In this document: piece after piece, positions 4,294-34,933 of the stretch
How the letters are laid out: each line of letters begins with the position of its first letter
How positions within the stretch are numbered: the stretch's first letter is position 1
Virus record (IMG/VR): IMGVR_UViG_3300049215_000771
Span: 468,730-532,729 of that record
Length of the DNA stretch: 64,000 nucleotides
Reading direction: 5' to 3' (one strand)
The notes under the pieces: generated by a model
Database searches by the model: none
Seen by the model: only the letters and a program-made list of their open reading frames with translations
Told to the model about the DNA's origin: nothing
Position numbers and translations under genes: made by a program

Positions 4294-4382
4294 CGGAAGG
4301 TGAGAGAATCGAACTCTCGGCCCCCGTTAGGGGGCACCACCTTTCCAGGGTGGCGTGACGAACCAACAGTCACCTACCTTCC
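4294..4382 (-). tRNA. tRNA-Ser(GGA)
   Basis: CCACC-CTGGAAA-GGTGG, long arm, G73. Confidence 0.93.
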
Positions 4383-4405
4383 ATCGACCGTGAAGGGAAC
4401 TGCTC

Positions 4406-4681
4406 TTATGGTAGTATAGATGCCGCCAATTTTTCCTTCAAGGCCAGAACCTCTGCCTCGGCGTCAGAATCCAGCAGTCCCTCCGCAAGATAGACATCGA
4501 CAAAGACGAGAAGGTTCGCTTTTTCTTCGATAGAAAGTGGCTCATTTCTTTCCAGCTTATCACGCATATTCCAGGCCACCTTGCCCTGCCATCGGTCTTC
4601 AATGGCTGGGTAGGTGGCTTTGATGTAAGCGTAGCAAGCGTCAGCGAGGTATTCGACCTCTTGCGGCGTAAACTCCATCAC
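4406..4681 (-). CDS. Hypothetical protein
   Basis: Coupled ORF. Confidence 0.6.
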   Translation of the reverse strand: MMEFTPQEVEYLADACYAYIKATYPAIEDRWQGKVAWNMRDKLERNEPLSIEEKANLLVFVDVYLAEGLLDSDAEAEVLALKEKLAASILP

Positions 4682-5322
4682 TGCGTCCCGCTTTCCACAC
4701 TCGGCTCGGCAGCATGGACCCCAGCGATCCCTGCGAAGTTGATGGGAACCTCGCTGTCCACGACCAGCGTGCCCACGGCGTCGTGCAGCACGATATTGCG
4801 AGCGCCCAGGGCGGCGATGGCGTCCTGAACGGCCTGCGGGTTGGCGTCATCGGTGAGGGTCACGATATACTGGTACTGACCAACTTCCTTCACTTCCTGG
4901 CTGTTCTCAACGCCACTGATGGCGGCGAAGTTGAGGGGAACCTCGCTGTCAACGGTCATGAGGCCCATGCCGTGAATCTCGATGTTGCGAGCGCCCTGCG
5001 CCGCCACAGCTTGTTTCACGGCCTCCAGGGTAGCCGTCGAGTCGAGGGCTTCCGCCGTCAGGGTCAGGACGTACTTCTTCATCTTCGTCTTGCCTTTCTT
5101 CTTGCGTGCTTCGTACTCGGCGATTTTGTTCGACATGAGGACCATGTGGGTCAAACCGCCAACAAACCCCAGCACTACGGATATGATCGTGATCCAGGGC
5201 ATAGTTCCTAGACGGGAATCTAGGAATATGCCCAGGATCATCGGGGCGACCATTTCCATGCCGCACTGAGCAAGGGCCATATACATGCCCATTTCTTTGC
5301 GATCACCGTCGTTCGGGATCAT
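4678..5322 (-). CDS. AtpZ/AtpI-like membrane domain in frame with a duplicated ~55-aa domain
   Basis: GMEMVAPMILGIFLDSRLGTMPW...LGFVGG; repeat GARNI...VDSEVP.NFA.I.GV occurs twice. Confidence 0.7.
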   Translation of the reverse strand: MIPNDGDRKEMGMYMALAQCGMEMVAPMILGIFLDSRLGTMPWITIISVVLGFVGGLTHMVLMSNKIAEYEARKKKGKTKMKKYVLTLTAEALDSTATLEAVKQAVAAQGARNIEIHGMGLMTVDSEVPLNFAAISGVENSQEVKEVGQYQYIVTLTDDANPQAVQDAIAALGARNIVLHDAVGTLVVDSEVPINFAGIAGVHAAEPSVESGTQ

Positions 5323-5702: not shown

Positions 5703-6226
5703 AGCTTCTTCCTCCGGTAATGGGAACGCTGGCGGTTTTCAAACGCCCAGCACTTGAACACTGTTTTCAGTTCTTCAGGTGAGGAAGCCCGGCGAAGCAC
5801 GGTCCCGTCGATCATTTCTTCAGTCAAAACCGTAATCAGGATGGGAGGTTCGCCTTCTCTGTCATTCTCTCCAATGCAAAAAACAGCCCTACCAGATTGG
5901 TAGAACTCAAATTCCTCGCCCTCGGAGCGCTGCTCTTTCTTGAATGCTGCCAAGAACAACGGATCGACAACCCTGGCCCCTGCTTCCTTGGCCTCCCGAT
6001 ACCGCTGAACAATTGAACGGTCGATGTACCTGGCCCCGATGTAAATGGCCTCTCGAATGTCCCGCTGAAGATTGGCACAAGTCACACAACCTGGACACTT
6101 CCCCAGGTGTTCGTAACGCTTGGGATCAGCGATGCGCTCGATCCAGCGTTCACGAGCATGAGGCGTAATGATGATAAGGTATGGCTTGCGAACAGGCACA
6201 TCAGGGGTTGGAGGCTGCTCGTCCAT
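5699..6226 (-). CDS. Hypothetical protein
   Basis: ITPHARERW motif and two CxxC. Confidence 0.6.
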   Translation of the reverse strand: MDEQPPTPDVPVRKPYLIIITPHARERWIERIADPKRYEHLGKCPGCVTCANLQRDIREAIYIGARYIDRSIVQRYREAKEAGARVVDPLFLAAFKKEQRSEGEEFEFYQSGRAVFCIGENDREGEPPILITVLTEEMIDGTVLRRASSPEELKTVFKCWAFENRQRSHYRRKKL

Positions 6227-6235
6227 ACCCCCATC

Positions 6236-6730
6236 TTACCCTGAAAAATCCTGGTTGTAAAGTCCCTTGCGAAGATACCACCGATTTGCTTCAAGGTACT
6301 GGAGGGTTCCGTTAAACTCCTCCTGCGGCACCCGGCTGAAATACTGGTTGATCCAGTTTTGCGCCTCGACGTTACTGGCCGGCATTGTCGGCACGGGAAT
6401 GAAGTACAAGGTGATTGTGGTCGGGTTGCATAGCTCGAACAGTTCGCCTTCGGGAATCTCCTCGAACTGGTCGAGCAGCATCATGAAAGCACAACAAACT
6501 CGATGCTCCTCGTCGATGCCGATGAGAAACATCCCTTCCGGCCACTTATTGGGAGGAAGATACATCTGATGCGTTCGCATGTAGCGAACGCAATTCGCCA
6601 TCCGACTCAGGGTCGGATCATCCTCGAAGAAACCTTCGTCACGTTTGAGTGGGTTGTCGGGATCGACGAGTTTGTGAATAGGAACAAGAATCGGCTTCAA
6701 CGCTCCAAGTTCCCAATCAGGACTGTCCAT
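6236..6730 (-). CDS. Hypothetical protein
   Basis: Start MDSPDW directly after upstream stop. Confidence 0.6.
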   Translation of the reverse strand: MDSPDWELGALKPILVPIHKLVDPDNPLKRDEGFFEDDPTLSRMANCVRYMRTHQMYLPPNKWPEGMFLIGIDEEHRVCCAFMMLLDQFEEIPEGELFELCNPTTITLYFIPVPTMPASNVEAQNWINQYFSRVPQEEFNGTLQYLEANRWYLRKGLYNQDFSG

Positions 6731-6731
6731 G

Positions 6732-7028
6732 TTACCATCCAGCTTGATAGAAGTAGTGACATCCAGGACACTGCATCCGTACAGGGTCGCCGGCCTCAAC
6801 GAAATACGGTTCTTTCTTCTCAAGAACCGTGCCGCATCTCGGACAAAACGTACTTCTGGCAACTGGAAGGTCTTTGGTGCATTGCTCATTCATAAGCCGC
6901 TGACTTTCCAGCAAGACCGCCGTGGTTTGTCGGGACCACTTATCGGAGATGCCTTTCAGCAAGCCATGCTTATTCCACCGTGCCTCCAGTTGTTTTGCTT
7001 CTTCGAGGAAACGATGATTCGGGTTCAT
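6732..7028 (-). CDS. gp23-like capsid N-terminal fragment fused to a Zn ribbon
   Basis: LEARW...GLLKGI.D...RQTTAVLLESQ then CPRCG..CPGC. Confidence 0.65.
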   Translation of the reverse strand: MNPNHRFLEEAKQLEARWNKHGLLKGISDKWSRQTTAVLLESQRLMNEQCTKDLPVARSTFCPRCGTVLEKKEPYFVEAGDPVRMQCPGCHYFYQAGW

Positions 7029-14640: not shown

Positions 14641-14807
14641 GGCTTACCGTCCTGATCGACCCAAATCATGCGGAAGTTTTTGCCGCTCCACTCCATGTGG
14701 TAGCCTTGGCTTTTCATGTAGGCGTAGTGCATGGCGGCAATGCCAAAAACCACGGCGAACAACAAAACATACCAACGAATTTCTTTCCACATATTTCACC
14801 CTTTCAG

Positions 14808-14898
14808 CGGAAGAGAAGGGAATTGAACCCTTGCCGGACAATTAAGCCGGGCCAGTTTTCGAGACTGGTGCAGCAATCACAACATCTGCCTCTCTTCC
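14808..14898 (-). tRNA. tRNA-Ser(CGA)
   Basis: CCAGT-CTCGAAA-ACTGG, G73. Confidence 0.92.
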
Positions 14899-15479
14899 TT
14901 GGAGCCGCACTACGACCATCGTGGCCCCCACGCCTATCGTAGTTTTCGCAACCGGGCCTGAGAACGGCTTTTGACGGCCAACACAGGACTTAACTGGTGC
15001 TGGATGCGGCATAAATAGGGACCGTGCTGCGACCATCATAGTCCTCGACGAATGTATCGCAACTTTTCCAGCCGGACTTACCGAACGTGTTTTCGTTCTT
15101 GCCCCCGGCGCTCCAGGCGAAGGTCTTTTTCAACCATAGGAGTCGGTAAGGCAGCTTGAACTATTCACTCGGATACTGTTTGGATACGGCCCTCGTCGAA
15201 CAGTCCTCCCAGGCTTGTAGGATTTCTCGTTCGGGCAAGGTTGTGCGCACAACCTTGTCGGGTCCAAAGCGACTCAGCCAGTGTGCTATTACGCCAAAAG
15301 GATTGCACACCAGGTAGCCTAACCTGGGTGCGTTTACTCCCACTCTTTGAATGGTGGCTGCCTCTAAGCCAACATCCTGGCTATCTCCGTTTAGCTTTGG
15401 CGGCGAGTTTATACAGCCCGCCGTGATATATCCCGATTCCTTCATCCTGGTGGATGCCCAACCATTTCGATGAAGGAAG
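14899..15479 (-). ncRNA. Large ncRNA candidate containing a 23S rRNA GTPase-centre (H42-H44) like domain
   Basis: No credible ORF between two tRNAs; 15386-15270 reads AGATAGCCAGGATGTTGGCTTAGAGGCAGCCACCATTCAAAGAGTG-(insert)-GCGTAATAGCACACTGGCTGAGTCG. Confidence 0.8.
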
Positions 15480-18369: not shown

Positions 18370-18455
18370 TGGGCACTGAGGGAGTTGAACCCCTCGACGA
18401 CCGCCTGGATGTTTAACGTCACGAGTTTTACAGACTCGCACCAGGAACAGCGCCC
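18370..18455 (-). tRNA. Atypical tRNA-Tyr(GUA)-like RNA lacking a normal D-arm
   Basis: Acceptor stem, CGAGT-CTGTAAA-ACTCG and T-arm present; D region only ~9 nt. Confidence 0.7.
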
Positions 18456-21141: not shown

Positions 21142-22323
<1,182 letters not shown>

Positions 22324-23006: not shown

Positions 23007-23097
23007 TTGGCAAGGTGGGATTCGATACCCACACGGTAGATTCGTCAACCTACCAACCCCCTCTAGCGGGGGCTGCGTCTTCTTCCGCCACTTGCCA
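23007..23097 (-). tRNA. Leu-like tRNA with 8-nt anticodon loop and 8-nt T loop
   Basis: GCCCC-CGCTAGAG-GGGGT; T loop TATCGAAT. Confidence 0.7.
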
Positions 23098-24811: not shown

Positions 24812-25632
24812 TCGTCTGTTTCTTCCTTTCAAGAACTTCTTCAAAGTGAGCGATGACCTTGGCTCCACGCACCGGGCAGAAGCGGCCCTCGTTCACTTCT
24901 CTACGGTAGTAAGCGATCCAACCTTCCAGTTCTTTGACACTCCCCTGCTTCCGCAGGTTCATGTGCCCGCCGTAGATTCCCCGTCGCTGGGCGAGTTGTT
25001 GTCCCGCCCGATGTCGGGACTGCATTTCCCCTCGGATGATTCCGATTCTTGTTGATTCTGACATCGGTACTTTCCTGGTAATGGCCCTATCCAACCCTTT
25101 GGCAAACCATCGCCAACCGGAATATACCATCCGGTCGCCGTTTCGGGATGCCCTGTCTGTTGAAGAATCCCGATCAGTTCGCCGTTGAACTCACAGCCTT
25201 CGGGATAATCATCCGTACTGTATTTCGCCAGTACACCCTGAATGGCCTCGTTCAGTTCCTTCTTGATTTTCTCGATCACACTCATTTCTGCGCCCCACGC
25301 CTTATGCCCGCCAACTTCTTGCAAGATCGGCTCGTAGTATTTCCAGGCCGTAGCGTAAGGAATGTTGGTGTCACACCCTTCACAATCTTCTTCCAGCAAA
25401 TGATGCCCAACACCTTCTTCAGCACAAGCCGGGTCCGGGCAATGCCTCATTGGAGCATGACAGTTCGGACAAACGTAGTAAAACTTCCTGCCACTGGCGT
25501 CGGTACTCCATTCAATCGACCGGGCCTGAAACTCCCTCCAAGTGATCGCCCCATCTTCGTACAACTTGCGAAGTCGGCGGGGGTCCATCTTCTTGTATGG
25601 TCCAGCCGGGCCGTTGATGGTTATGAGCCGTC

Positions 25633-25974
25633 TCAGGTATCTTTGAGCGCCTTCATCACGGCGTTGAACGCTGCTGTCGCCCGTTCCTTGTCCCCGATCT
25701 TGTTGACCGCCCATAACATCAACCTCAAGTCGTTCGCTTGAGCCTCCAGCGCCGTTTGCGGGATTGGGAAAGCATCTCCATTGCGGTCATGCTTGCCGTA
25801 CCTGTCGATTTTTCGAGCCTCGGCGATGGCTTCTTCGTCGCCTTCGAGGATGCGTTGCACCAGACCACGTTCGTTGAGAGCCGCCAGGAAATTGAAAACT
25901 TCACCTTTGCTGATGGTCAACTTCTCGGCCAGCATTTCACACAGCTTCCAGCGATCCTTCATCGACATCGCCAT
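25633..25974 (-). CDS. Hypothetical protein
   Basis: ORF with GGAG SD. Confidence 0.6.
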   Translation of the reverse strand: MAMSMKDRWKLCEMLAEKLTISKGEVFNFLAALNERGLVQRILEGDEEAIAEARKIDRYGKHDRNGDAFPIPQTALEAQANDLRLMLWAVNKIGDKERATAAFNAVMKALKDT

Positions 25975-26277: not shown

Positions 26278-26541
26278 TCAATCTTCCGGTCGTCCCCACC
26301 GATGATGGTCGTGATCGTCCCTGGCGTAATCATCCGGGTTGAAGTATTGCAAGTTGCCGGACCAGTGATCGACTTGCTCCACGAATGCCCGCAGGCTGTT
26401 ATAAACTTCCAATATCCCGGCTTTCTGCATCTTATTGTAGTTCCGAGACTCGCCCTTGGTTGCCGTGGTTTCCTCGATGAACTTCACTAACGTCCGTGCT
26501 TCGTCCACAGTAAGCACTGACCACTGAAAAGGCAATAGCAT
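26278..26541 (-). CDS. Hypothetical protein
   Basis: Small ORF. Confidence 0.45.
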   Translation of the reverse strand: MLLPFQWSVLTVDEARTLVKFIEETTATKGESRNYNKMQKAGILEVYNSLRAFVEQVDHWSGNLQYFNPDDYARDDHDHHRWGRPED

Positions 26542-26801
26542 TACAACTCCAAACCACCGTTGACCAGAATTTCTCGAACCTCAGCAGAACTACCGATGGG
26601 TTCCAGGGCGGCATACAACTGCTCGGCGACATAAACCTCGCTTGCGCCCTCATGGTTGACCACCCGAACCTGAGTCGGGTCCGCCTCAACCGGAAACGCC
26701 TCGTACTCACCTGTGACGAAAACCAGGAAGCAGTGATTGATCTGCTTGATCCTTTCTTCGTCATCGAGAGCAGGCGGAAGAAACTCGTTCCAATAACCCA
26801 T
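26541..26801 (-). CDS. Hypothetical protein
   Basis: Start MGYWNEF with AGGAG SD. Confidence 0.55.
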   Translation of the reverse strand: MGYWNEFLPPALDDEERIKQINHCFLVFVTGEYEAFPVEADPTQVRVVNHEGASEVYVAEQLYAALEPIGSSAEVREILVNGGLEL

Positions 26802-26813
26802 GTTTTTTTCTCC

Positions 26814-26903
26814 TGGCGGTAACGAAGGGAATTGAACCCATAAGGCGGTTTCCCGCTCGGCGGCTCTTGTGCCGTTGCCTTCTCCACTTAGGCTTGCGCT
26901 ACC
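26814..26903 (-). tRNA. Ser-like tRNA with 6-nt anticodon loop and encoded CCA
   Basis: GGTAGCG/CGTTACC-G-CCA; CGGC-ACAAGA-GCCG; long arm. Confidence 0.65.
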
Positions 26904-26969
26904 AGATTTCGCCATTTGCTCCGCTGTTGATGGCATTGATCGACTCATCATCCATCCTTGCTCTACCAG

Positions 26970-27043
26970 TGCCCAGGGTCGGACTTGAACCGACGACCTT
27001 CTGCTCTTCAGGCAGACGCTACTACCAACTGAGCTACCTGGGC
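26970..27043 (-). tRNA. tRNA-Phe(GAA)
   Basis: TCTGC-CTGAAGA-GCAGA. Confidence 0.95.
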
Positions 27044-27060
27044 CAAACCATTCAGTAAAA

Positions 27061-27172
27061 AAGGGCGTGCAGGATGATGGGACTCGAACCCACCTGTACC
27101 TACCTTGCACGGCTTGCGCCGCTTGGGGACTCGCTGCCAACTGCTCATTACGGTCACACCCTGCACGCCCTT
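27061..27172 (-). ncRNA. tRNA-like RNA with 16-bp terminal stem
   Basis: AAGGGCGTGCAGGGTG/CATCCTGCACGCCCTT plus T-arm GTGGG-TTCGAGT-CCCAT; no canonical anticodon arm. Confidence 0.65.
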
Positions 27173-27520
27173 GGTCCTTAGCCCCTCACTCGCCCGTGAA
27201 CCGTTCGCTTCCTGCGACGGTTGAACCGGAAGTTATTCCAGTAGGCTTTTCGCCTCCAGACGCCTTGGGACTTTTTCTTCTTCCTTTGTTTCAACTTTGC
27301 CTCCGCAGTTGAGGAATTGGTAGTTTCCAACGCCGTTGCAGAGGACGCAGATGACCATTTTATTTACTCCCAGGTTGCGGCCTTTTCTTCAACCAAGGCG
27401 TATGCCGCTTCGCCTGACACTCGGCTGTGCAGAAATGCAGCAGCCGCCTTTTGCCACGAACCGTGTGATATGGGCCTTCAATCACTGTGCGGCAACCGTC
27501 GCACACAACTCCACCCATTT

Positions 27521-27766
27521 TTAACACGACTCGTCTCCCGAACGCTCGAAAAGTGAACCCTTCACTTCATGTCCGATGCCGACACACTTGACGCCAGCCT
27601 GGACAACGTGACTTCCCAGCCGCCCCTTGTGGACCTTCACGACCTTGCTACACCAGGGACATTTGACTTCCTTCAGCTTCGACAAATCTTTCTTCTCATA
27701 GCCCCTGTGAACCTTCTTTCGTTCAAGGTGCTTGCCGGTATTTGTCGGAATGTTCTTGTTTGCCAT
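27521..27766 (-). CDS. Basic Zn-finger-like protein
   Basis: CPWC...H...C. Confidence 0.5.
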   Translation of the reverse strand: MANKNIPTNTGKHLERKKVHRGYEKKDLSKLKEVKCPWCSKVVKVHKGRLGSHVVQAGVKCVGIGHEVKGSLFERSGDESC

Positions 27767-27776
27767 GTTACACCAG

Positions 27777-27894
27777 CGGATCAGAACGGGACTCGAACCC
27801 GCAACATGAATTTGGGTAGCGATTTTGCTACAAGACCCCCATGTACCTTACCTTTTTAGGGCTTAGTGCTTCTGCCGTTTCTGCCACCTGATCC
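27777..27894 (-). ncRNA. 118-nt expanded tRNA-like RNA
   Basis: GGATCAG/CTGATCC-G, D- and T-arms, loop CTAAAAA, ~45-nt variable region. Confidence 0.65.
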
Positions 27895-27896
27895 AG

Positions 27897-27984
27897 CGGA
27901 AGGTGCGGGAGTCGAACTCGCAACACCCCTTTCAGGGTGTGTCCCGTTTCGAGCGGGGTGGGCCTGCCAATGCCCAAACCTTCC
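27897..27984 (-). tRNA. tRNA-Ser(CGA), second copy
   Basis: CCCG-CTCGAAA-CGGG, long arm, G73. Confidence 0.88.
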
Positions 27985-27986
27985 AG

Positions 27987-28247
27987 TTACATTCTTGCTC
28001 TGACATCACACCATCGAATCCGACGAACGGTGTAAGCACCACGAAGTTCACCATCTTCAATCGCCGCCAGCGCCTCTTCTTCCGTATCATACGACATCGT
28101 GTATATCGACGCCGTGTTGAGGTTGAGAATTCGCCATTCCTTCGACCGACCATCAAAAATAGCCGTCTCGAAGATGAGAGTACCAGTCCTTCGGACACCC
28201 TTCAACCACTCCATGTCTTCAGGACCGCCAGTGATGAAATCACCCAT
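27987..28247 (-). CDS. Hypothetical protein
   Basis: GGAGG SD; between tRNAs. Confidence 0.6.
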   Translation of the reverse strand: MGDFITGGPEDMEWLKGVRRTGTLIFETAIFDGRSKEWRILNLNTASIYTMSYDTEEEALAAIEDGELRGAYTVRRIRWCDVRARM

Positions 28248-28262
28248 AACAAATCCTCCAAG

Positions 28263-29256: not shown

Positions 29257-29556
29257 TCACGTTTCGACCTTCACCAATTTGCCAAAGACCCCGTTGCGGC
29301 CAACCCAGCCGTTAATATGGCCTCGGTTGTTCCCGATCTGGTAGCGGTCCCCCTGGACTGCCTTCACCAGATGAAGATATTGACGACCGGCGACCTTGCA
29401 CAAGACAACATCACCAACTTCAATATCACCGCTGATGGGTTCCACGGTGCAGAGTTGGCCGCTATCGACCTTTCCCTTCATCGAGGAACCCCGTGGACGA
29501 AACTTCACAGTCTCGCCCGCCTGCAACTTCGAGATGTAGCCGGTTGCCCAGCCCAT
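29257..29556 (-). CDS. S24/S26 peptidase-like small protein
   Basis: RGSSM...VGDVVLCKV...LHLVKA...GNN. Confidence 0.7.
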   Translation of the reverse strand: MGWATGYISKLQAGETVKFRPRGSSMKGKVDSGQLCTVEPISGDIEVGDVVLCKVAGRQYLHLVKAVQGDRYQIGNNRGHINGWVGRNGVFGKLVKVET

Positions 29557-29579
29557 ATTTGCCGCCTTTGTGTGGGTAT

Positions 29580-29635
29580 AAAAAAAGAACCCCGGCAGCC
29601 TGTTTCCCTTTTGAGGATTCGGCTGCCGGGGTTCT
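29580..29635 (-). terminator. Strong intrinsic terminator (attenuator 3:4 hairpin)
   Basis: 15-bp AGAACCCCGGCAGCC/GGCTGCCGGGGTTCT followed by a T run. Confidence 0.9.
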
Positions 29636-29653
29636 ACCCCCACAAAGTCCTTG

Positions 29654-29737
29654 TCAGACCGTGCAGCCTCCCTCAGCGCTATACGAAAATAGCGACGACG
29701 AGGAAAACAGACTAAGTGACAAGGAGAAGAAATTCAC
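29654..29737 (-). CDS. Leader peptide MNFFSLSLSLFSSSSLFSYSAEGGCTV
   Basis: GTG start after AAAGGG; 18 consecutive F/S/L/Y codons; TGA 18 nt before the terminator. Confidence 0.8.
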   Translation of the reverse strand: MNFFSLSLSLFSSSSLFSYSAEGGCTV

Positions 29738-30001: not shown

Positions 30002-30151
30002 CGAACCACCCAGGAGTCGAACCTGGAGGTTGGACCGGCGTGTACACCCCCGGTGGCCCCAACCCTGGAAACCTCACTTTCCCCCATCAAAAACAAGGTC
30101 GGTTTGCAACCCTTCCATGTTCCATCAAGGTACTCGTTATCCTAGTGGTCC
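30002..30151 (-). ncRNA. 150-nt tRNA-like RNA
   Basis: GGACCAC/GTGGTTC-G acceptor, CCAGG-TTCGACT-CCTGG T-arm, expanded interior. Confidence 0.6.
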
Positions 30152-30163
30152 AATCGTACACAG

Positions 30164-30272
30164 CGGAGAAGGTAGGAGTCGAACCTACAATGTCGGCGGG
30201 AGTTCCCCAGGGAATGCTTGGAACAATACACCTGGGTACTAGCCGCCCGCTTTGCCGTTTGCGTACTTCTCC
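30164..30272 (-). ncRNA. 109-nt tRNA-like RNA with elongated anticodon arm
   Basis: GGAGAAG/CTTCTCC-G, D-arm, T-arm; ~55-nt hairpin replaces the anticodon arm. Confidence 0.7.
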
Positions 30273-30443: not shown

Positions 30444-30761
30444 CTACTCCGGTTTTTCGGGGTTGTAAACCTCGTTCTGCCATTTTCCTCGCATCCTGCC
30501 AAGATTGTAGCCGGCCAGCAGGGTCATGCGAATGATCCCCACCTTCTGCGTGATCTCAGGGTCATTTTCTGCGCCCCTGGCCAGCGTTTCCGGCTCGAAA
30601 ACGCCCGTCATGTACATCGCCAGCAAATTCTTGAGCGAGGGCTTGTCCCCATCAGCCGGCTCCTGGCACAGAAGCGGCTGGTTAATCAGCTTCATCGCTT
30701 CGTCCAGACAGGCGAAGAACTCCTCGTTGTCCTTGTAGAGTCTGCTTTGCTCATCCGACAT
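30444..30761 (-). CDS. Hypothetical protein
   Basis: Coupled ORF. Confidence 0.55.
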   Translation of the reverse strand: MSDEQSRLYKDNEEFFACLDEAMKLINQPLLCQEPADGDKPSLKNLLAMYMTGVFEPETLARGAENDPEITQKVGIIRMTLLAGYNLGRMRGKWQNEVYNPEKPE

Positions 30762-31518
30762 GATGGTTCTCCAGGAAGTTGTACACGCACCTGTCCGTGC
30801 CGATGGCGACTTCCAGCACCTTGGCCTGGCACACCTGCCCCGAAGATTGTGTCCACTTGCAGTCCGTTCGCTTCGAGATCGAACAGACTTCCATCTTGGT
30901 GGAATCGCAAACAATGTCCACCGTTTCCTCACTGTAGGAAGGCAGCCGGTCACTCTTCTCGACGTAGCAAAGGCCGATCATGTCAGAAATCATCTTCTTG
31001 ACCGCCCCGATCACAGCCTTGCTGTAGTCGTTCTGCGTGGTGACGCCGTACATGCACTGGAATTCCAACTGGTAGAACTCCTTGAGTCGCATATTTTTTG
31101 TCACCTGGTCCTGCTCACGCCGGAACGACTTGCCATGCTGCCAGACGCATATCGGCAGCCTCGTTTTCGTTTCGGTGTGGTCCAGGAGCCACTGGCCGAA
31201 CAAATACGATCCCATCGTCGTTTCGGGGCGCAAAGCCAGGGTATCGTAATCCAGGACCGTATTGGCGTATGTGCCGCCCACAGCCCCTTCTTCCCGCTCA
31301 ACCGCAGGAACGTAGATGTCAGCGGGCGTATAGTTGGGGTTGATGAAGTCTCGTGGCGTCAGAATCGGCGCTTCCACCTGGATCATCTCGAAGGCTCGGT
31401 TCTCGGCTTTGAGAATATCCCTCATGCCGGCCACGAAGTAATCCACCATCATGTTGCGCAGGCGGATTTCCTTCTCGGTCCAGAAAATCAGACCGTTCCG
31501 GTTATACAAACTATCCAT
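30751..31518 (-). CDS. Minimal class II aaRS core, GlyRS (alpha2)-like
   Basis: LRPETT, QHGKSFRRE, MRLKEFYQLEFQ, EVCSISKRTD, VLEVAIGTDR; no anticodon domain. Confidence 0.8.
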   Translation of the reverse strand: MDSLYNRNGLIFWTEKEIRLRNMMVDYFVAGMRDILKAENRAFEMIQVEAPILTPRDFINPNYTPADIYVPAVEREEGAVGGTYANTVLDYDTLALRPETTMGSYLFGQWLLDHTETKTRLPICVWQHGKSFRREQDQVTKNMRLKEFYQLEFQCMYGVTTQNDYSKAVIGAVKKMISDMIGLCYVEKSDRLPSYSEETVDIVCDSTKMEVCSISKRTDCKWTQSSGQVCQAKVLEVAIGTDRCVYNFLENHHVG

Positions 31519-31578
31519 CGTAGTCTCCGGGAGAATAGGGAACCGCCCTTTGGAACTTACCAAAGGGCGGTTGAGGGG

Positions 31579-34145: not shown

Positions 34146-34853
34146 TTACCTCAGCTTGTTTTTCTTGATCTCATCCCCCAACAGGCATCCCTGTTGAAAA
34201 CCTTCTCGGACCATCTTGAAGCGATCCGTTACCCATTTGCCGTCAGACACCTTGATGTAAATACCTTCCCTGGTTTTTGAGGCGAAGTGGGACGGCCTGT
34301 TGGCAATTTCTTCAAGAAACTCGTAGCTTTGTGCCGATCCCCACACGTCCAAAGGGATCACCTGGAATCCGGCCCGGTTCAGGGCATCCAGACTCGTCAG
34401 CGGGTCAATGTAGTTCCCAGCCTCCTGATCGTACAAGTCGTAGGCGATGAACCAGTCCGGCAACAAGTCGTACTCCATACCGTGCTGCTGAACCATCCAC
34501 TCTCCATAGACCGTGACGGGGCCGACAAGGTTCGTAATTTCCTCAAACTTGTCCTTGTTCTTGTAGAACCAGTTGAACGCCCCGGCAAACTGCGACAGCG
34601 AAGGGTTCAAGTCCTTGCTCAGATCGCCTTTACGGAGAATCTTCGTTCGGTTCCGAATCACTGGATGGCCGTCCACCAATGCCATACCACAGTTAGCCCC
34701 GTCGATTTTCTCCTGAACCATGCAGCGAGAGCCGAAAATGACCGCCGCTTCTTGTTCGGAGGCGATGCGGTCCCCTTTCGTGTTCGGCTTCCAGGGCAGG
34801 TGCCGAGTTGCAGGGTATTCCGGCAGCAGGCTCGTGAGTTTCACCTTTTTCAT
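34146..34853 (-). CDS. RNA ligase family protein
   Basis: YPATRHLPW, QEKIDGAN, VYGEW, FIAYD, EGIYIK, KMVR. Confidence 0.88.
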   Translation of the reverse strand: MKKVKLTSLLPEYPATRHLPWKPNTKGDRIASEQEAAVIFGSRCMVQEKIDGANCGMALVDGHPVIRNRTKILRKGDLSKDLNPSLSQFAGAFNWFYKNKDKFEEITNLVGPVTVYGEWMVQQHGMEYDLLPDWFIAYDLYDQEAGNYIDPLTSLDALNRAGFQVIPLDVWGSAQSYEFLEEIANRPSHFASKTREGIYIKVSDGKWVTDRFKMVREGFQQGCLLGDEIKKNKLR

Positions 34854-34933
34854 ATCTGATGACCGTGAGTTCGGATTTTCCGCTCACCGGCATCATACCA
34901 CGAAAGTTACTGGCTGTAAAGCTAGATAGCCTT

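What the first reader, a model, noticed from the sequence alone, without database searches (positions are those of the whole stretch)
26814..27894. Three tRNA-like RNAs with broken or rebuilt anticodon arms
26814-26903 has a Ser-like body, a 6-nt loop and encoded CCA. 27061-27172 has a 16-bp terminal stem and T-arm but no anticodon arm. 27777-27894 has a G73 body, a CUAAAAA loop and a ~45-nt variable region. The acceptor/T half (EF-Tu, RNase P and SerRS side) is kept while decoding is altered. Inference: decoys or non-ribosomal aminoacyl donors.
Basis: partly seen in the sequence, partly recalled or inferred. Interest (0 to 1): 0.62.

Follow-up and report, generated by a model that had tools for sequence, protein, structure and literature searches.

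The report
Odd tRNA-like genes in huge phage
Three real tRNA-derived genes sit in the tRNA island of a 533-kb phage from moss; one belongs to a conserved, phage-only family of tRNA look-alikes with no anticodon, one is a remodelled leucine-type tRNA kept in a relative, and one is an orphan serine-type copy, so they are not random decay, but what they do is still inferred.

Summary
All three features are in the sequence as described, on the minus strand of a tRNA island (56 canonical tRNAs, EF-Tu) of a 532,729-bp phage record from moss metagenomes. They are three different things.

- **C2 (27061-27172)** belongs to a conserved family I found in 8 phage contigs, one copy in each record searched whole. 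It has a terminal stem of 8-16 bp, an extra CCGUAAU linker, tRNA-type D- and T-loops, and a capped hairpin in place of the anticodon arm. My model scores members 60-93 bits and ordinary tRNAs 30 or less. 98% of cells pair and 12 of 20 pairs show compensatory changes. No Rfam family matches.
- **C3 (27777-27894)** is a tRNA-Leu paralogue. It has a 7-nt loop (CUAAAAA; UUGAAAG in the one relative that keeps it), a 7-layer stem and a ~40-nt variable arm. Six pairs show compensatory changes.
- **C1 (26814-26903)** has no orthologue. Its cloverleaf is intact. Its anticodon arm has two near-isoenergetic registers: a 6-nt loop, or a 7-nt CAAGAGC loop with anticodon AGA.

"Random decay" is refuted for C2 and C3. 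For C2, an aminoacyl-donor role is unlikely, because its 3' end is buried in the stem. I favour non-decoding tRNA mimicry plus tRNA-type transcript processing; this is inferred, not shown.

The parts
26814..26903 (-). C1: orphan Ser-type (class II) tRNA-like gene with G73 and encoded CCA. Its anticodon arm has two registers: a 6-nt loop ACAAGA, or a 7-nt loop CAAGAGC with A33 and anticodon AGA.
   Evidence: Sequence. The MFE fold is a cloverleaf. The registers score -27.0 and -26.0 kcal/mol. ARAGORN at ps90 calls it tRNA-Ser(aga). Rfam tRNA gives 21.4 bits. There is no homologue in any locus. It is the only tRNA-like gene with CCA, against 0 of 56 tRNAs.
26541..26801 (-). 86-aa ORF whose GGAG Shine-Dalgarno motif starts directly after C1's CCA; the ATG lies 15 nt after G73.
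   Evidence: No Pfam family. No homologue in related loci.
26970..27043 (-). Canonical tRNA-Phe(GAA), lying between C2 and C1.
   Evidence: ARAGORN. Rfam tRNA 67.8 bits.
27061..27172 (-). C2: anticodon-less tRNA-like RNA. It has a 16-bp terminal stem, a UGA-CCGUAAU linker, the D-arm GAGC-AGUUGGCA-GCGA, a GCAA-capped hairpin in place of the anticodon arm, and a T-arm. The core that the model matches is 27069-27164.
   Evidence: z = -3.2. Family model R1 gives 86 bits here against 30 or less for tRNAs. Covariation is shown.
27057..27062 (-). U6 run at the 3' end of C2's terminal stem (the first two U's pair with AA). It looks like the tail of an intrinsic terminator.
   Evidence: Sequence. The terminator scan does not list it because the loop is longer than 8 nt.
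27233..27766 (-). Three small ORFs (81, 55 and 41 aa; two are Cys-rich and zinc-finger-like) between C3 and C2. They are absent between the C3 and C2 homologues of L017.
   Evidence: (weak zf-FCS hit).
27777..27894 (-). C3: tRNA-Leu-derived class II tRNA-like gene. It has an 8-bp acceptor followed by G and CU, a 7-layer anticodon stem with tandem purine mismatches, the loop CUAAAAA, and a ~40-nt variable hairpin.
   Evidence: Pair counts: 95.8% of cells paired, 6 compensatory pairs. Model R2 gives 132.6 bits here and 128.7 in L017; the next best matches are tRNA-Leu genes at 54 bits.
27897..27984 (-). Canonical tRNA-Ser(CGA). Its G73-CU trailer abuts the first base of C3.

Best explanation
The three loci are genuine tRNA-derived genes in the class II (Leu/Ser/Tyr) plus Phe tRNA island of a huge phage. 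They are probably co-transcribed with neighbouring tRNAs and small ORFs, and they have three different standings.

(1) C2 is a non-decoding tRNA mimic of a conserved, phage-restricted family.
- It keeps the tRNA 'elbow' (D-loop AGUUGGNA and T-loop GGUUCGANUCC) and a coaxial acceptor/T helix.
- Its acceptor stem is lengthened to 8-16 bp, so there is no free NCCA end.
- Its anticodon arm is replaced by a capped hairpin.
- In this phage the outer stem plus the U run also looks like the 3' end of a transcript.
- Inferred role: a stable RNA that engages a factor recognising the tRNA top half or elbow (RNase P, the CCA-adding enzyme, T-loop modifiers, or a host tRNA-directed enzyme), and/or ends and punctuates the tRNA operon. 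It does not decode and is probably not charged.

(2) C3 is a remodelled tRNA-Leu paralogue.
- In the window copy (8-bp reading) and in the L017 copy (7-bp reading) the discriminator is followed by the clade's usual CU trailer, so it is probably matured like a tRNA.
- It keeps U33 and a Phe-type triplet (AAA here, GAA in L017) on an over-long stem with a very long variable arm.
- It may be charged and act as a rare or missense tRNA, or it may serve structurally.

(3) C1 is a lineage-specific tRNA-Ser paralogue.
- Its arms are intact but its anticodon arm is ambiguous.
- It most likely still acts as a tRNA-type processing site that sets the 5' end of the downstream mRNA, and possibly as tRNA-Ser(AGA).

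Shown: structure, conservation, family membership, genomic arrangement. Inferred: processing, partners, charging.
For: Setting:
- The record is a 532,729-bp virus with 56 ARAGORN tRNAs, EF-Tu and a CCA-adding-type enzyme.

C2:
- Homologues first turned up through synteny (L017) and nhmmer (L048). A pattern scan then found L055, L056, L058, L059 and L064.
- Model R1 was built from 6 members. It scores the two left-out members 60.2 and 68.5 bits, and all 8 members 60-93 bits, against 30 or less for every tRNA.
- There is exactly one copy in G000 and one in each positive whole record.
- 98.1% of cells pair. 12 of 20 pairs have changes on both sides. The covariation score is 0.77, against 0.24 for shuffles and 0.16 or less for slid partners. 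The D-stem pair 13:22 is C-G in 4 members and A-U in 4.
- Six of the 8 copies lie inside or at the edge of tRNA arrays. The tRNA neighbourhood of L055 and L064 was not established.
- The motif scan hit IMG/VR six times, all true members. Of 8 hits in 185,579 species genomes only one was a true member, on a 15.5-kb MAG contig.

C3:
- L017 6509-6624 is a homologue. 95.8% of cells pair, 6 pairs are compensatory, and slid controls give 0-1.
- The inner variable-arm hairpin also covaries: GUAGC/GCUAC against GUGGC/GCCAU.
- The nearest paralogues are tRNA-Leu genes.
- The N73-CU trailer occurs in 51 of 56 tRNAs of the genome. It follows C3's discriminator in the window's 8-bp reading, and follows A73 in L017's 7-bp reading.

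C1:
- 22 of 24 stem positions pair, although the sequence differs widely from all five Ser paralogues.
- GGAG follows directly after CCA, and the ATG lies 15 nt after G73.

Punctuation:
- At least 9 tRNA(-like) genes of the window are followed within 13-20 nt by a Shine-Dalgarno-like motif and an ATG; C3's ATG lies 10 nt downstream without such a motif.
- Promoter-like and terminator-like sites in 22-31 kb are no more frequent than in shuffled sequence.
- An RNA contig runs unbroken from tRNA-Ser(CGA) into the next ORF (27893-28043).
Against: - There is no expression or processing evidence for the three loci themselves. RNA-run contigs cover only 27893-28248 and 30034-30116, and contigs cannot show ends.
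- C2's strongly conserved linker and D-arm (CCGUAAUGAG.AGU..GG...CGA) go beyond what RNase P punctuation needs. This points to a specific partner that I could not identify; the genes next to family members have nothing in common.
- Part of that sequence conservation is by construction, because 5 of the 8 members were found with a pattern containing it.
- The family is patchy. It is absent from a complete 427-kb relative and from 80 related metagenome loci.
- C3 rests on only two sequences. Its D-stem is weaker in the window copy, and its discriminator and first acceptor pair differ between the two.
- C1 has no orthologue, so a recent inactivating 1-nt change cannot be excluded.
- An open frame also runs through C1. 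The same frame runs through the undoubted tRNA-Phe, so this carries little weight.
Confidence: 0.5

Rival explanations
1. One reading: the three RNAs keep the side bound by EF-Tu, RNase P and aminoacyl-tRNA synthetases. They act as decoys for tRNA-binding or tRNA-cleaving factors, or as aminoacyl donors for non-ribosomal reactions.
For: - The acceptor/T helix and the elbow are kept in all three.
- C1 carries G73-CCA.
- In its 8-bp reading, C3 has G1-C72, G2-C71, A3-U70, G73 and a long variable arm. These are like this phage's own tRNA-Ser genes and like known Ser identity elements (PMC7609411).
- The phage encodes EF-Tu and a GlyRS-like class II core fragment nearby.
- C2's invariant linker and D-arm suggest a specific binding partner.
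Against: - In all 8 family members C2's 3' strand is fully paired over 8-16 bp, with no NCCA.
- C3's discriminator and first pair are not conserved in L017.
- C1 is not conserved at all.
- No aminoacyl-transferase or defence target was identified.
- A decoy without an anticodon loop cannot bait anticodon nucleases.
Confidence: 0.2
2. They are unusual but working decoding tRNAs, comparable to allo-tRNAs and other irregular soil tRNAs. C1 would be tRNA-Ser(AGA) in its 7-nt register. C3 would be a Ser- or Leu-charged tRNA reading Phe codons (AAA/GAA), that is, a deliberate missense tRNA.
For: - C1's canonical numbering fits the 7-nt register with a Ser anticodon.
- Both copies of C3 keep U33 and a Phe-type triplet, and each has the CU trailer in one acceptor reading.
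- Irregular tRNAs with longer acceptor and anticodon stems, G-1, extra loops and non-cognate anticodons are documented in peat and forest soils, and some are active in E. coli (PMC5389517).
Against: - C1's 7-nt register has A33 and an A.C closing pair.
- C3's anticodon stem has 7 layers with two purine-purine mismatches.
- C3's acceptor/T branch is 13 bp in the window but 12 bp in L017 when judged by the CU rule.
- The phage already has tRNA-Phe(GAA) copies and four tRNA-Ser isoacceptors.
- C2 has no anticodon at all.
Confidence: 0.15
3. They are decaying tRNA pseudogenes with no function, left over from duplications in a very large tRNA array.
For: - Rfam tRNA scores fall below the gathering score, and ARAGORN at default settings misses them.
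- C1 lies in a ~1-kb stretch that is missing from the nearest relative and has no homologue.
- The window copy of C3 has a weakened D-stem.
Against: - C2: 8 members in phages of 41-61% G+C, with 12 compensatory pairs.
- C3: 6 compensatory pairs at about 23% sequence divergence.
- C1: 22 of 24 stem positions pair despite large divergence from every paralogue.
Confidence: 0.1
4. They are interrupted tRNA genes whose insertions are removed by splicing, restoring ordinary tRNAs.
For: - Many other tRNA genes of this genome carry 11-60-nt insertions in the anticodon region.
- Lys, Cys, His, Glu(UUC) and Ile(CAU) tRNAs are absent from the uninterrupted calls. Lys(CUU) and Cys(GCA) appear only when insertions are allowed; His, Glu(UUC) and Ile(CAU) were not found at all.
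- Five of these genes share one 48-nt module.
Against: - In C3 the extra sequence sits at the variable-arm position, beside an intact 7-nt loop hairpin.
- C2 has no exon-like anticodon remnants.
- C1 is short by a nucleotide, not long.
- The genome has no RtcB and no splicing endonuclease.
- No joints were seen in the RNA contigs, though coverage of these loci is nil.
Confidence: 0.05

Closest known systems
Phage T4 species 1 and species 2 RNAs (rnaC, rnaD)
   Same: They are small stable RNAs of unknown function encoded at the end of a phage tRNA gene cluster. rnaC ends in a tRNA-type T-arm and acceptor helix (GGGUUCGAAUCCC). That matches C2 as a non-decoding tRNA-like RNA inside a phage tRNA array.
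   Different: They are not homologous by my model: R1 gives rnaC 23.6 bits, the same as ordinary tRNAs. T4 rnaC lacks the CCGUAAUGAG linker/D-arm block in the same position, and it lacks the long terminal stem.
Allo-tRNAs and 'irregular tRNAs' of peat and forest soil (Mukai et al. 2017, PMC5389517; review PMC7609411)
   Same: - The habitat is the same type (peat, moss, acidic soil).
- They come as polycistrons of irregular class II-like tRNAs.
- They have longer acceptor and anticodon stems, G-1, an extra loop between the acceptor and the D-stem, and anticodons that do not match their identity.
- Some are inactive in translation and were proposed to be regulatory.
- C3 (8-bp acceptor, long V-arm, Phe-type triplet) and C2 (extra linker between acceptor and D-arm) resemble these features.
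   Different: - Allo-tRNAs are defined by a 12-bp 8/4 or 9/3 acceptor/T branch. C3 is 8/5 (or 7/5), and C2 is 16/5.
- The described E-loop tRNAs still have anticodon loops; C2 has none.
- Those sequences were attributed to Acidobacteria, whereas these lie in a phage genome.
- I did not compare sequences with that paper's supplement.
tRNA-like processing signals: plant mitochondrial t-elements and mascRNA/MALAT1
   Same: These are tRNA-shaped elements without decoding function. RNase P and RNase Z cut them to make mRNA or lncRNA ends (PMC1920247, listed, abstract only; established knowledge for mascRNA). This fits the arrangement of a tRNA(-like) gene followed within 13-20 nt by a Shine-Dalgarno-like motif and an ATG.
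   Different: No processing data exist here. C2's conserved D-arm and linker exceed what such signals need. Weak Rfam mascRNA hits fall on other elements only.
tmRNA tRNA-like domain and bacterial Y-RNA-like YrlA
   Same: Both are tRNA mimics that keep the T-arm and D-loop elbow and lack an anticodon.
   Different: - ARAGORN finds no tmRNA, and C2 has no G3.U70 and no tag frame.
- From my recollection of the published structure (not checked here), YrlA's tRNA-like module is circularly permuted, with its ends in the 'anticodon' stem. C2 keeps the native order: acceptor 5', D, hairpin, T, acceptor 3'.
- Rfam YrlA, YrlB and tmRNA models do not hit C2.

Membership tests
tRNA (Rfam RF00005 / ARAGORN) | Score at or above the curated gathering score (29 bits), or a default ARAGORN call | tested here: not met
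   C1 scores 21.4 bits and C3 22.8 bits; C2 has no match at E<=10. None is called by ARAGORN at default settings. C1 is called tRNA-Ser(aga) only at ps90.
tRNA (Rfam RF00005 / ARAGORN) | 7-bp acceptor, 5-bp T-stem with a GTTCRANYC loop, and a D-loop with GG | tested here: met
   All three have a fully paired acceptor and a T-arm. D-loop GG is present.
tRNA (Rfam RF00005 / ARAGORN) | 5-bp anticodon stem with a 7-nt loop, U33 and a purine at position 37 | tested here: not met
   C1 has a 6-nt loop, or a 7-nt loop with A33. C2 has no such loop. C3 has a 7-nt loop with U33 and A37, but on a 7-layer stem with two mismatches.
C2-type anticodon-less tRNA-like family (defined here, model R1) | Terminal stem of 8 bp or more contiguous with the T-arm; linker CCGUAAU; D-arm GAGM-AGU(U)GGNN-KCGA; capped hairpin; GGU-NGG; T-loop GGUUCGANUCC | tested here: met
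   The window copy scores 86 bits. Members left out of the seed score 60.2 and 68.5 bits. tRNAs score 30 or less.
Allo-tRNA (8/4 or 9/3) | 12-bp acceptor/T branch split 8/4 or 9/3, with Ser identity (G73, long V-arm) | tested here: not met
   C3 is 8/5 in the window and 7/5 by the CU rule in L017. G73 occurs only in the window copy. C1 is 7/5.
tRNA-Sec | 13-bp 8/5 branch, 6-bp D-stem, UCA anticodon, Rfam RF01852 at 47 bits or more | tested here: not met
   Only the neighbouring tRNA-Ser(CGA) hits RF01852, at 40.3 bits, below threshold. C3 has no UCA and has a Leu-type D-arm.
tmRNA / YrlA / YrlB | Match to the Rfam models or an ARAGORN tmRNA call | tested here: not met
T4 rnaC/rnaD | Sequence and structure homology to the T4 stable RNAs | tested here: not met
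   R1 gives rnaC 23.6 bits, at the background level of tRNAs. Only the kind of context is shared.
Intrinsic (factor-independent) terminator | G+C-rich stem directly followed by a U run, and actual termination | tested here: inconclusive
   In the window a 16-bp stem is followed by a U6 run, and L017 has a U-rich tail. L048 and others have none or have a separate hairpin. The scan tool excludes loops longer than 8 nt. There are no 3'-end data.
Spliced (intron-bearing) tRNA genes | An insertion in the anticodon loop plus a splicing system, or RNA junctions | tested here: not met
   No RtcB and no splicing endonuclease. No joints, though RNA coverage of these loci is nil. The insertions in C3 are not in the loop.

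The most novel reading that the evidence does not exclude
C2 represents a dedicated, phage-borne RNA mimic of the tRNA elbow and top half, one copy per genome, whose job is to occupy a tRNA-recognising protein. That protein could be a host tRNA-directed defence enzyme or a tRNA-maturation enzyme. C2 would then be an RNA-based counter-defence or regulatory decoy embedded in tRNA arrays. Alongside it, this huge-phage clade maintains whole families of class II tRNA-likes with non-standard anticodon arms: 6-nt loops, 7-layer stems, D-arm-less forms and module-bearing forms. Together these would form a second, non-decoding tRNA repertoire.
Probability: 0.15. Interest if true: 0.85.

Novelty: new variant of a known kind. 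Interest (0 to 1): 0.6.

Why it matters
Phage tRNA arrays are usually explained by codon usage or by replacing host tRNAs destroyed by defence nucleases. This window shows that a huge phage also keeps tRNA-shaped RNAs that cannot decode.

- One of them, C2, is conserved with covariation across unrelated phage contigs and is absent from Rfam. It is therefore a concrete, testable non-coding RNA family.
- The model, the alignment and eight members are in hand.
- It also links the 'irregular tRNAs' reported from peat-soil metatranscriptomes to a possible phage source.
- The work exposes clade-wide processing signatures: the N73-CU trailer, and tRNA genes followed closely by ORFs. These make the maturation pathway experimentally tractable.

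Tried and rejected
- **Close relatives through single small proteins:** nothing found.
- **GenBank phages by blastn:** only tRNA-Phe or T-arm hits, and no family member.
- **Exact C2 and C3 motifs in IMG/VR and JGI metagenomes:** only the L017 contig, or nothing.
- **80 metagenome loci around a conserved neighbouring protein:** no C2, C3 or C1 homologue.
- **Model R2 for C3:** no third member.
- **RNA runs:** only Logan contigs were available. They touch 27893-28248 and 30034-30116, with no joints and no ends, so neither expression nor processing of the three loci is shown or excluded.
- **Loose ends of contigs:** they do not occur elsewhere in the genome.
- **Splicing enzymes:** RtcB and the archaeal-type endonuclease are absent.
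- **Neighbouring genes of C2 family members:** nothing in common.
- **Stop-codon recoding by ORF lengths:** uninformative at this G+C content, so I dropped it and used no alternative code.
- **Not used:** The search for homologous proteins, the search of protein representatives, structure prediction and complex prediction.
- **tRNA-His reading of C3 (G-1:C73):** rejected. There is no GUG triplet, L017 has U-1/A73, and the nearest paralogues are tRNA-Leu genes.
- **attP or host-tRNA fragment reading of C1:** considered because of the CCA and the 'provirus' label, but not testable here. CCAGGAG differs from the usual CUUGGAG trailer at only two positions, so the CCA may be incidental.
Full report
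**Setting.** The window is the last 64 kb of a 532,729-bp IMG/VR virus record. DNA runs from moss metagenomes hold it. The genome carries 56 tRNA genes by ARAGORN, or 65 if insertions are allowed. They form a plus-strand block at 0.1-121 kb and a minus-strand block at 473-499 kb. The window holds the minus-strand block. This block is almost entirely class II tRNAs (Leu, Ser, Tyr) plus Phe, interspersed with small ORFs, an EF-Tu gene (21142-22323) and a GlyRS-like class II core fragment (30751-31563). A CCA-adding-type enzyme is encoded elsewhere.

**The observation.** All three features are present as described, on the minus strand.

*C1 (26903->26814)* folds into a class II cloverleaf.
- It has a 7-bp acceptor, G73 and encoded CCA.
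- The variable arm is capped by GAAA.
- The anticodon hairpin is CGGC-ACAAGA-GCCG.
- Because the 3' strand reads GCCGCCG, a second register costs only 1 kcal/mol more. It gives a 7-nt loop CAAGAGC closed by A.C, with A33 and anticodon AGA.
- The second register fits canonical numbering, and ARAGORN at a relaxed threshold reports it as tRNA-Ser(aga).

*C2 (27172->27061)* has a 16-bp terminal stem that runs straight into a T-arm.
- There is no 7-nt anticodon loop.
- A U6 run sits at its 3' end.
- The fold z-score is -3.2.

*C3 (27894->27777)* has an 8-bp acceptor followed by G (or 7 bp followed by C73).
- The D-arm is Leu-type.
- The hairpin GCC-CUAAAAA-GGU sits inside a 7-layer stem.
- A 39-nt variable hairpin follows.

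Default ARAGORN and Rfam at gathering thresholds miss all three. Rfam tRNA gives 21.4 bits (C1) and 22.8 bits (C3), and nothing for C2. An independent DNA sample has the identical sequence across C1 and C2.

**They are part of a larger phenomenon.** A scan for T-arms with matching acceptor strands finds more than 20 further tRNA-shaped elements in the genome that ARAGORN's default mode does not call. Two clade-wide signatures help to judge which are treated as tRNAs.
- 51 of 56 tRNAs have C74-U75 after the discriminator and none has CCA. The same holds in related huge-phage contigs.
- At least 9 tRNA(-like) genes of the window are followed within 13-20 nt by a Shine-Dalgarno-like motif and an ATG.

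In the 8-bp reading, C3 starts exactly after the G73-CU of tRNA-Ser(CGA) and is itself followed by G-CU. C1 is followed by CCA-GGAG. C2 has neither signature, because its 3' strand is buried in the stem.

**C2 is a member of a conserved family.**
- The nearest relative is L017, a 49-kb contig found through the phage EF-Tu, syntenic and about 77% identical in DNA. It has a C2 homologue at 6630-6733.
- nhmmer pointed to another homologue in L048.
- The shared motif CCGTAATGAGNAGTN{0,1}GGNNNCGA then recovered copies in four more IMG/VR contigs and in one 15.5-kb MAG contig. The other seven hits in 185,579 species genomes are chance matches inside genes.

All eight copies share one plan:
- a terminal stem of 8-16 bp;
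- three linker bases, then CCGUAAU;
- a D-arm GAGM-AGU(U)GGNN-KCGA with tandem G.A/A.G and two Watson-Crick pairs;
- a short hairpin capped by GNRA or another small loop, expanded by an inserted hairpin in the window, L017 and L059;
- GGU-NGG, then about five bases;
- a T-arm GGUUCGANUCC, followed directly by the 3' strand of the terminal stem.

A covariance model built from six members scores the two left-out members 60.2 and 68.5 bits and all members 60-93 bits. Every ordinary tRNA in 585 kb of phage loci scores 30 or less. On the model-based alignment, 98.1% of cells pair and 12 of 20 pairs change on both sides. The covariation score is 0.77, against 0.24 for shuffles and 0.16 or less for slid partners. 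The D-stem pair 13:22 is C-G in four members and A-U in four.

There is one copy in G000 and one in each positive whole record. A complete 427-kb relative and 80 related metagenome loci have none. No Rfam family matches any member, GenBank phages show none by blastn, and a literature search found no description. Six of the eight copies lie in or beside tRNA arrays; the tRNA neighbourhood of L055 and L064 was not established.

**What C2 can and cannot do.**
- It has no anticodon, so it cannot decode.
- Its 3' end is paired in every member, so it cannot accept an amino acid unless the outer stem is removed. RNase P measuring 12 bp from the T-loop could in principle do that, but this is untested.
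- It keeps the features that make the tRNA elbow (the D-loop GG and the T-loop). It also keeps a strongly conserved single-stranded linker, which suggests a specific partner.
- In the window and in L017 the stem is followed by a U-rich tail, like the 3' end of a transcript. In L055 a separate terminator hairpin follows.

I therefore read C2 as a stable tRNA mimic that also marks or ends the tRNA transcription unit. The partner is unknown; neighbouring genes give no hint.

**C3 is a remodelled tRNA-Leu paralogue.**
- L017 6509-6624 is its homologue, and there it lies directly upstream of the C2 homologue.
- Over 24 pairs, 95.8% of cells pair and six pairs show changes on both sides, including the extra eighth acceptor pair (G-C against U-A). 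Slid controls give 0-1.
- The inner variable-arm hairpin also covaries (GUAGC/GCUAC against GUGGC/GCCAU), and a 4-nt pyrimidine-rich bulge is kept.
- A model built from the two copies finds no third member. Its next best matches are the phage's tRNA-Leu genes at 54 bits.
- Both copies keep U33 and a Phe-type triplet (AAA; GAA), on a stem of seven layers with conserved tandem purine mismatches.
- By the CU rule, the window copy has an 8-bp acceptor with G73, and its first three pairs (GGA) match the phage's tRNA-Ser genes. The L017 copy has a 7-bp acceptor with A73, like tRNA-Leu.

Selection therefore keeps the fold, but no constant aminoacylation identity is evident. It may be a rare or missense tRNA of the 'irregular' soil type, or a structural RNA.

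**C1 is an orphan.**
- nhmmer finds only weak similarity to tRNA-Ser genes.
- The stretch holding tRNA-Phe, C1 and the 86-aa ORF is missing from L017.
- Even so, 22 of 24 stem positions pair, although the sequence differs widely from all five Ser paralogues. That speaks against long neutral decay.
- Its CCA is unique in the genome, but CCAGGAG differs from the usual CUUGGAG trailer at only two positions.
- Class II tRNA-likes with 6-nt loops recur in this clade. The element at window 23007-23097 and its homologue in L068 both have one, as does an element in L048. A 6-nt loop is therefore not by itself a sign of a dead gene here.

**Expression.** Only contigs of metatranscriptome runs were available. 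They cover 27893-28248 in three samples and 30034-30116 in one. One contig runs unbroken from tRNA-Ser(CGA) into the next ORF, which is consistent with co-transcription. The libraries may contain DNA, and contigs cannot show ends. Promoter-like and terminator-like sites in 22-31 kb are no more frequent than in shuffled sequence.

**Comparison with what is known.** Four groups come closest.
- *Phage T4's rnaC and rnaD.* These are stable RNAs of unknown function at the end of its tRNA cluster, and rnaC ends in a tRNA-type T/acceptor helix. They are the same kind of thing, but they are not homologous by R1.
- *The allo-tRNAs and irregular tRNAs of Mukai et al. 2017.* They come from peat and forest soils. 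They have long acceptor and anticodon stems, G-1, an extra loop between the acceptor and the D-stem, and non-cognate anticodons, and some are inactive in translation. C3 and C2 resemble them but do not meet the 8/4 or 9/3 definition, and C2 has no anticodon loop.
- *tRNA-like processing elements,* such as plant mitochondrial t-elements and mascRNA. These are analogues for the punctuation reading.
- *The tmRNA tRNA-like domain and YrlA.* These are mimics with a different topology, and they do not match.

**Verdict.**
- 'Random decay' is refuted for C2 and C3 and remains open for C1.
- The decoy reading remains possible for C2.
- The aminoacyl-donor reading is unlikely for C2 and untested for C1 and C3.
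- I rate this a new variant of a known kind (non-decoding or irregular tRNA-like RNAs in phage tRNA clusters), with a newly delimited family (C2) as the most solid product.

No alternative genetic code was used. No toxin or animal-virus sequence was involved.

Noticed in passing
G000 871-995, 4872-4970, 6212-6336, 14780-14904, 34759-34888 (outside the window; L015/L016); L002 minus strand ~4300-4420: Five tRNA bodies carry a shared ~48-nt module in the anticodon region (AGUCUCAGCGCCAAUUUGUCCUNCGGGAAUG...GGGAUUACAU). The same module sits in a tRNA of an unrelated phage contig, with a covarying helix (CCAA/UUGG, CUUC/GAAG, CGUUC/GAACG). No Rfam family matches. The genome has no RtcB and no splicing endonuclease. 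It may be a small mobile or spliced element specific to tRNA anticodon loops.
   Followed up: partly
whole genome G000; loci L017-L026, L048, L068, L069, L018: 51 of 56 tRNAs have C74-U75 directly after the discriminator and none encodes CCA. This is shared by the EF-Tu-bearing huge-phage relatives but not by L056 or L078. Downstream tRNA-likes begin right after this CU. It is probably a clade-specific 3'-processing signal.
   Followed up: partly
window 4000-31000, minus strand: At least 9 tRNA or tRNA-like genes are followed within 13-20 nt by a Shine-Dalgarno-like motif and the ATG of a small ORF (for example 28263->28247, 26817->26801, 25989->25974, 18370->18355). This suggests that tRNA excision sets the mRNA 5' ends.
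   Followed up: partly
window 23007-23097 (-); L068 12299-12390; L048 2367-2457: Class II tRNA-likes with a 6-7-bp anticodon stem and a 6-nt loop (GCUAGA, GUAUCA, CCAUUA). The window and L068 copies are homologous and both follow tRNA-Leu(GAG). The L068 copy ends in A-CCA. ARAGORN calls the window copy 'tRNA-Pyl(cta)'.
   Followed up: partly
window 18370-18455 (-); L019 7828-7915; L020 7543-7630; L022 7794-7879; L069 10687-10773: A conserved tRNA-Tyr(GUA)-like gene without a D-arm (acceptor, then GUUCCU..., then the anticodon arm CUGUAAA). It is present in several related phages.
   Followed up: no
window 30164-30272 and 30002-30151 (-); L017 3948-4057; L048 6851-6954: tRNA bodies in which the anticodon loop is replaced by a hairpin of about 40 nt (stem GGCGGC...GCCGAC), conserved in two relatives. 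Next to one of them lies a 150-nt tRNA-like with a 60-80-nt insert. An RNA contig shares 30034-30116 and then continues into unrelated sequence.
   Followed up: no
G000 121393-121540, 80837-80930, 25614-25717; window 23007-23097: tRNA genes with CUA (three), UCA and possibly UUA anticodons, that is, suppressor-like tRNAs for all three stop codons. ORF-length statistics did not show recoding, and I did not pursue it.
   Followed up: partly
window 21142-22323 (-), 30751-31563 (-): A full-length bacterial-type EF-Tu gene, and a 270-aa fragment resembling the catalytic core of dimeric GlyRS without the flanking domains. Both are conserved in relatives.
   Followed up: partly
window 27108-27258 and 29373-29674 (DNA run X3): Contig depth rises two- to three-fold, and contigs diverge at 27222 and 29531. 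A more abundant related strain in the same moss samples shares the 5' half of C2 and its upstream 50 nt, but has different flanks.
   Followed up: no
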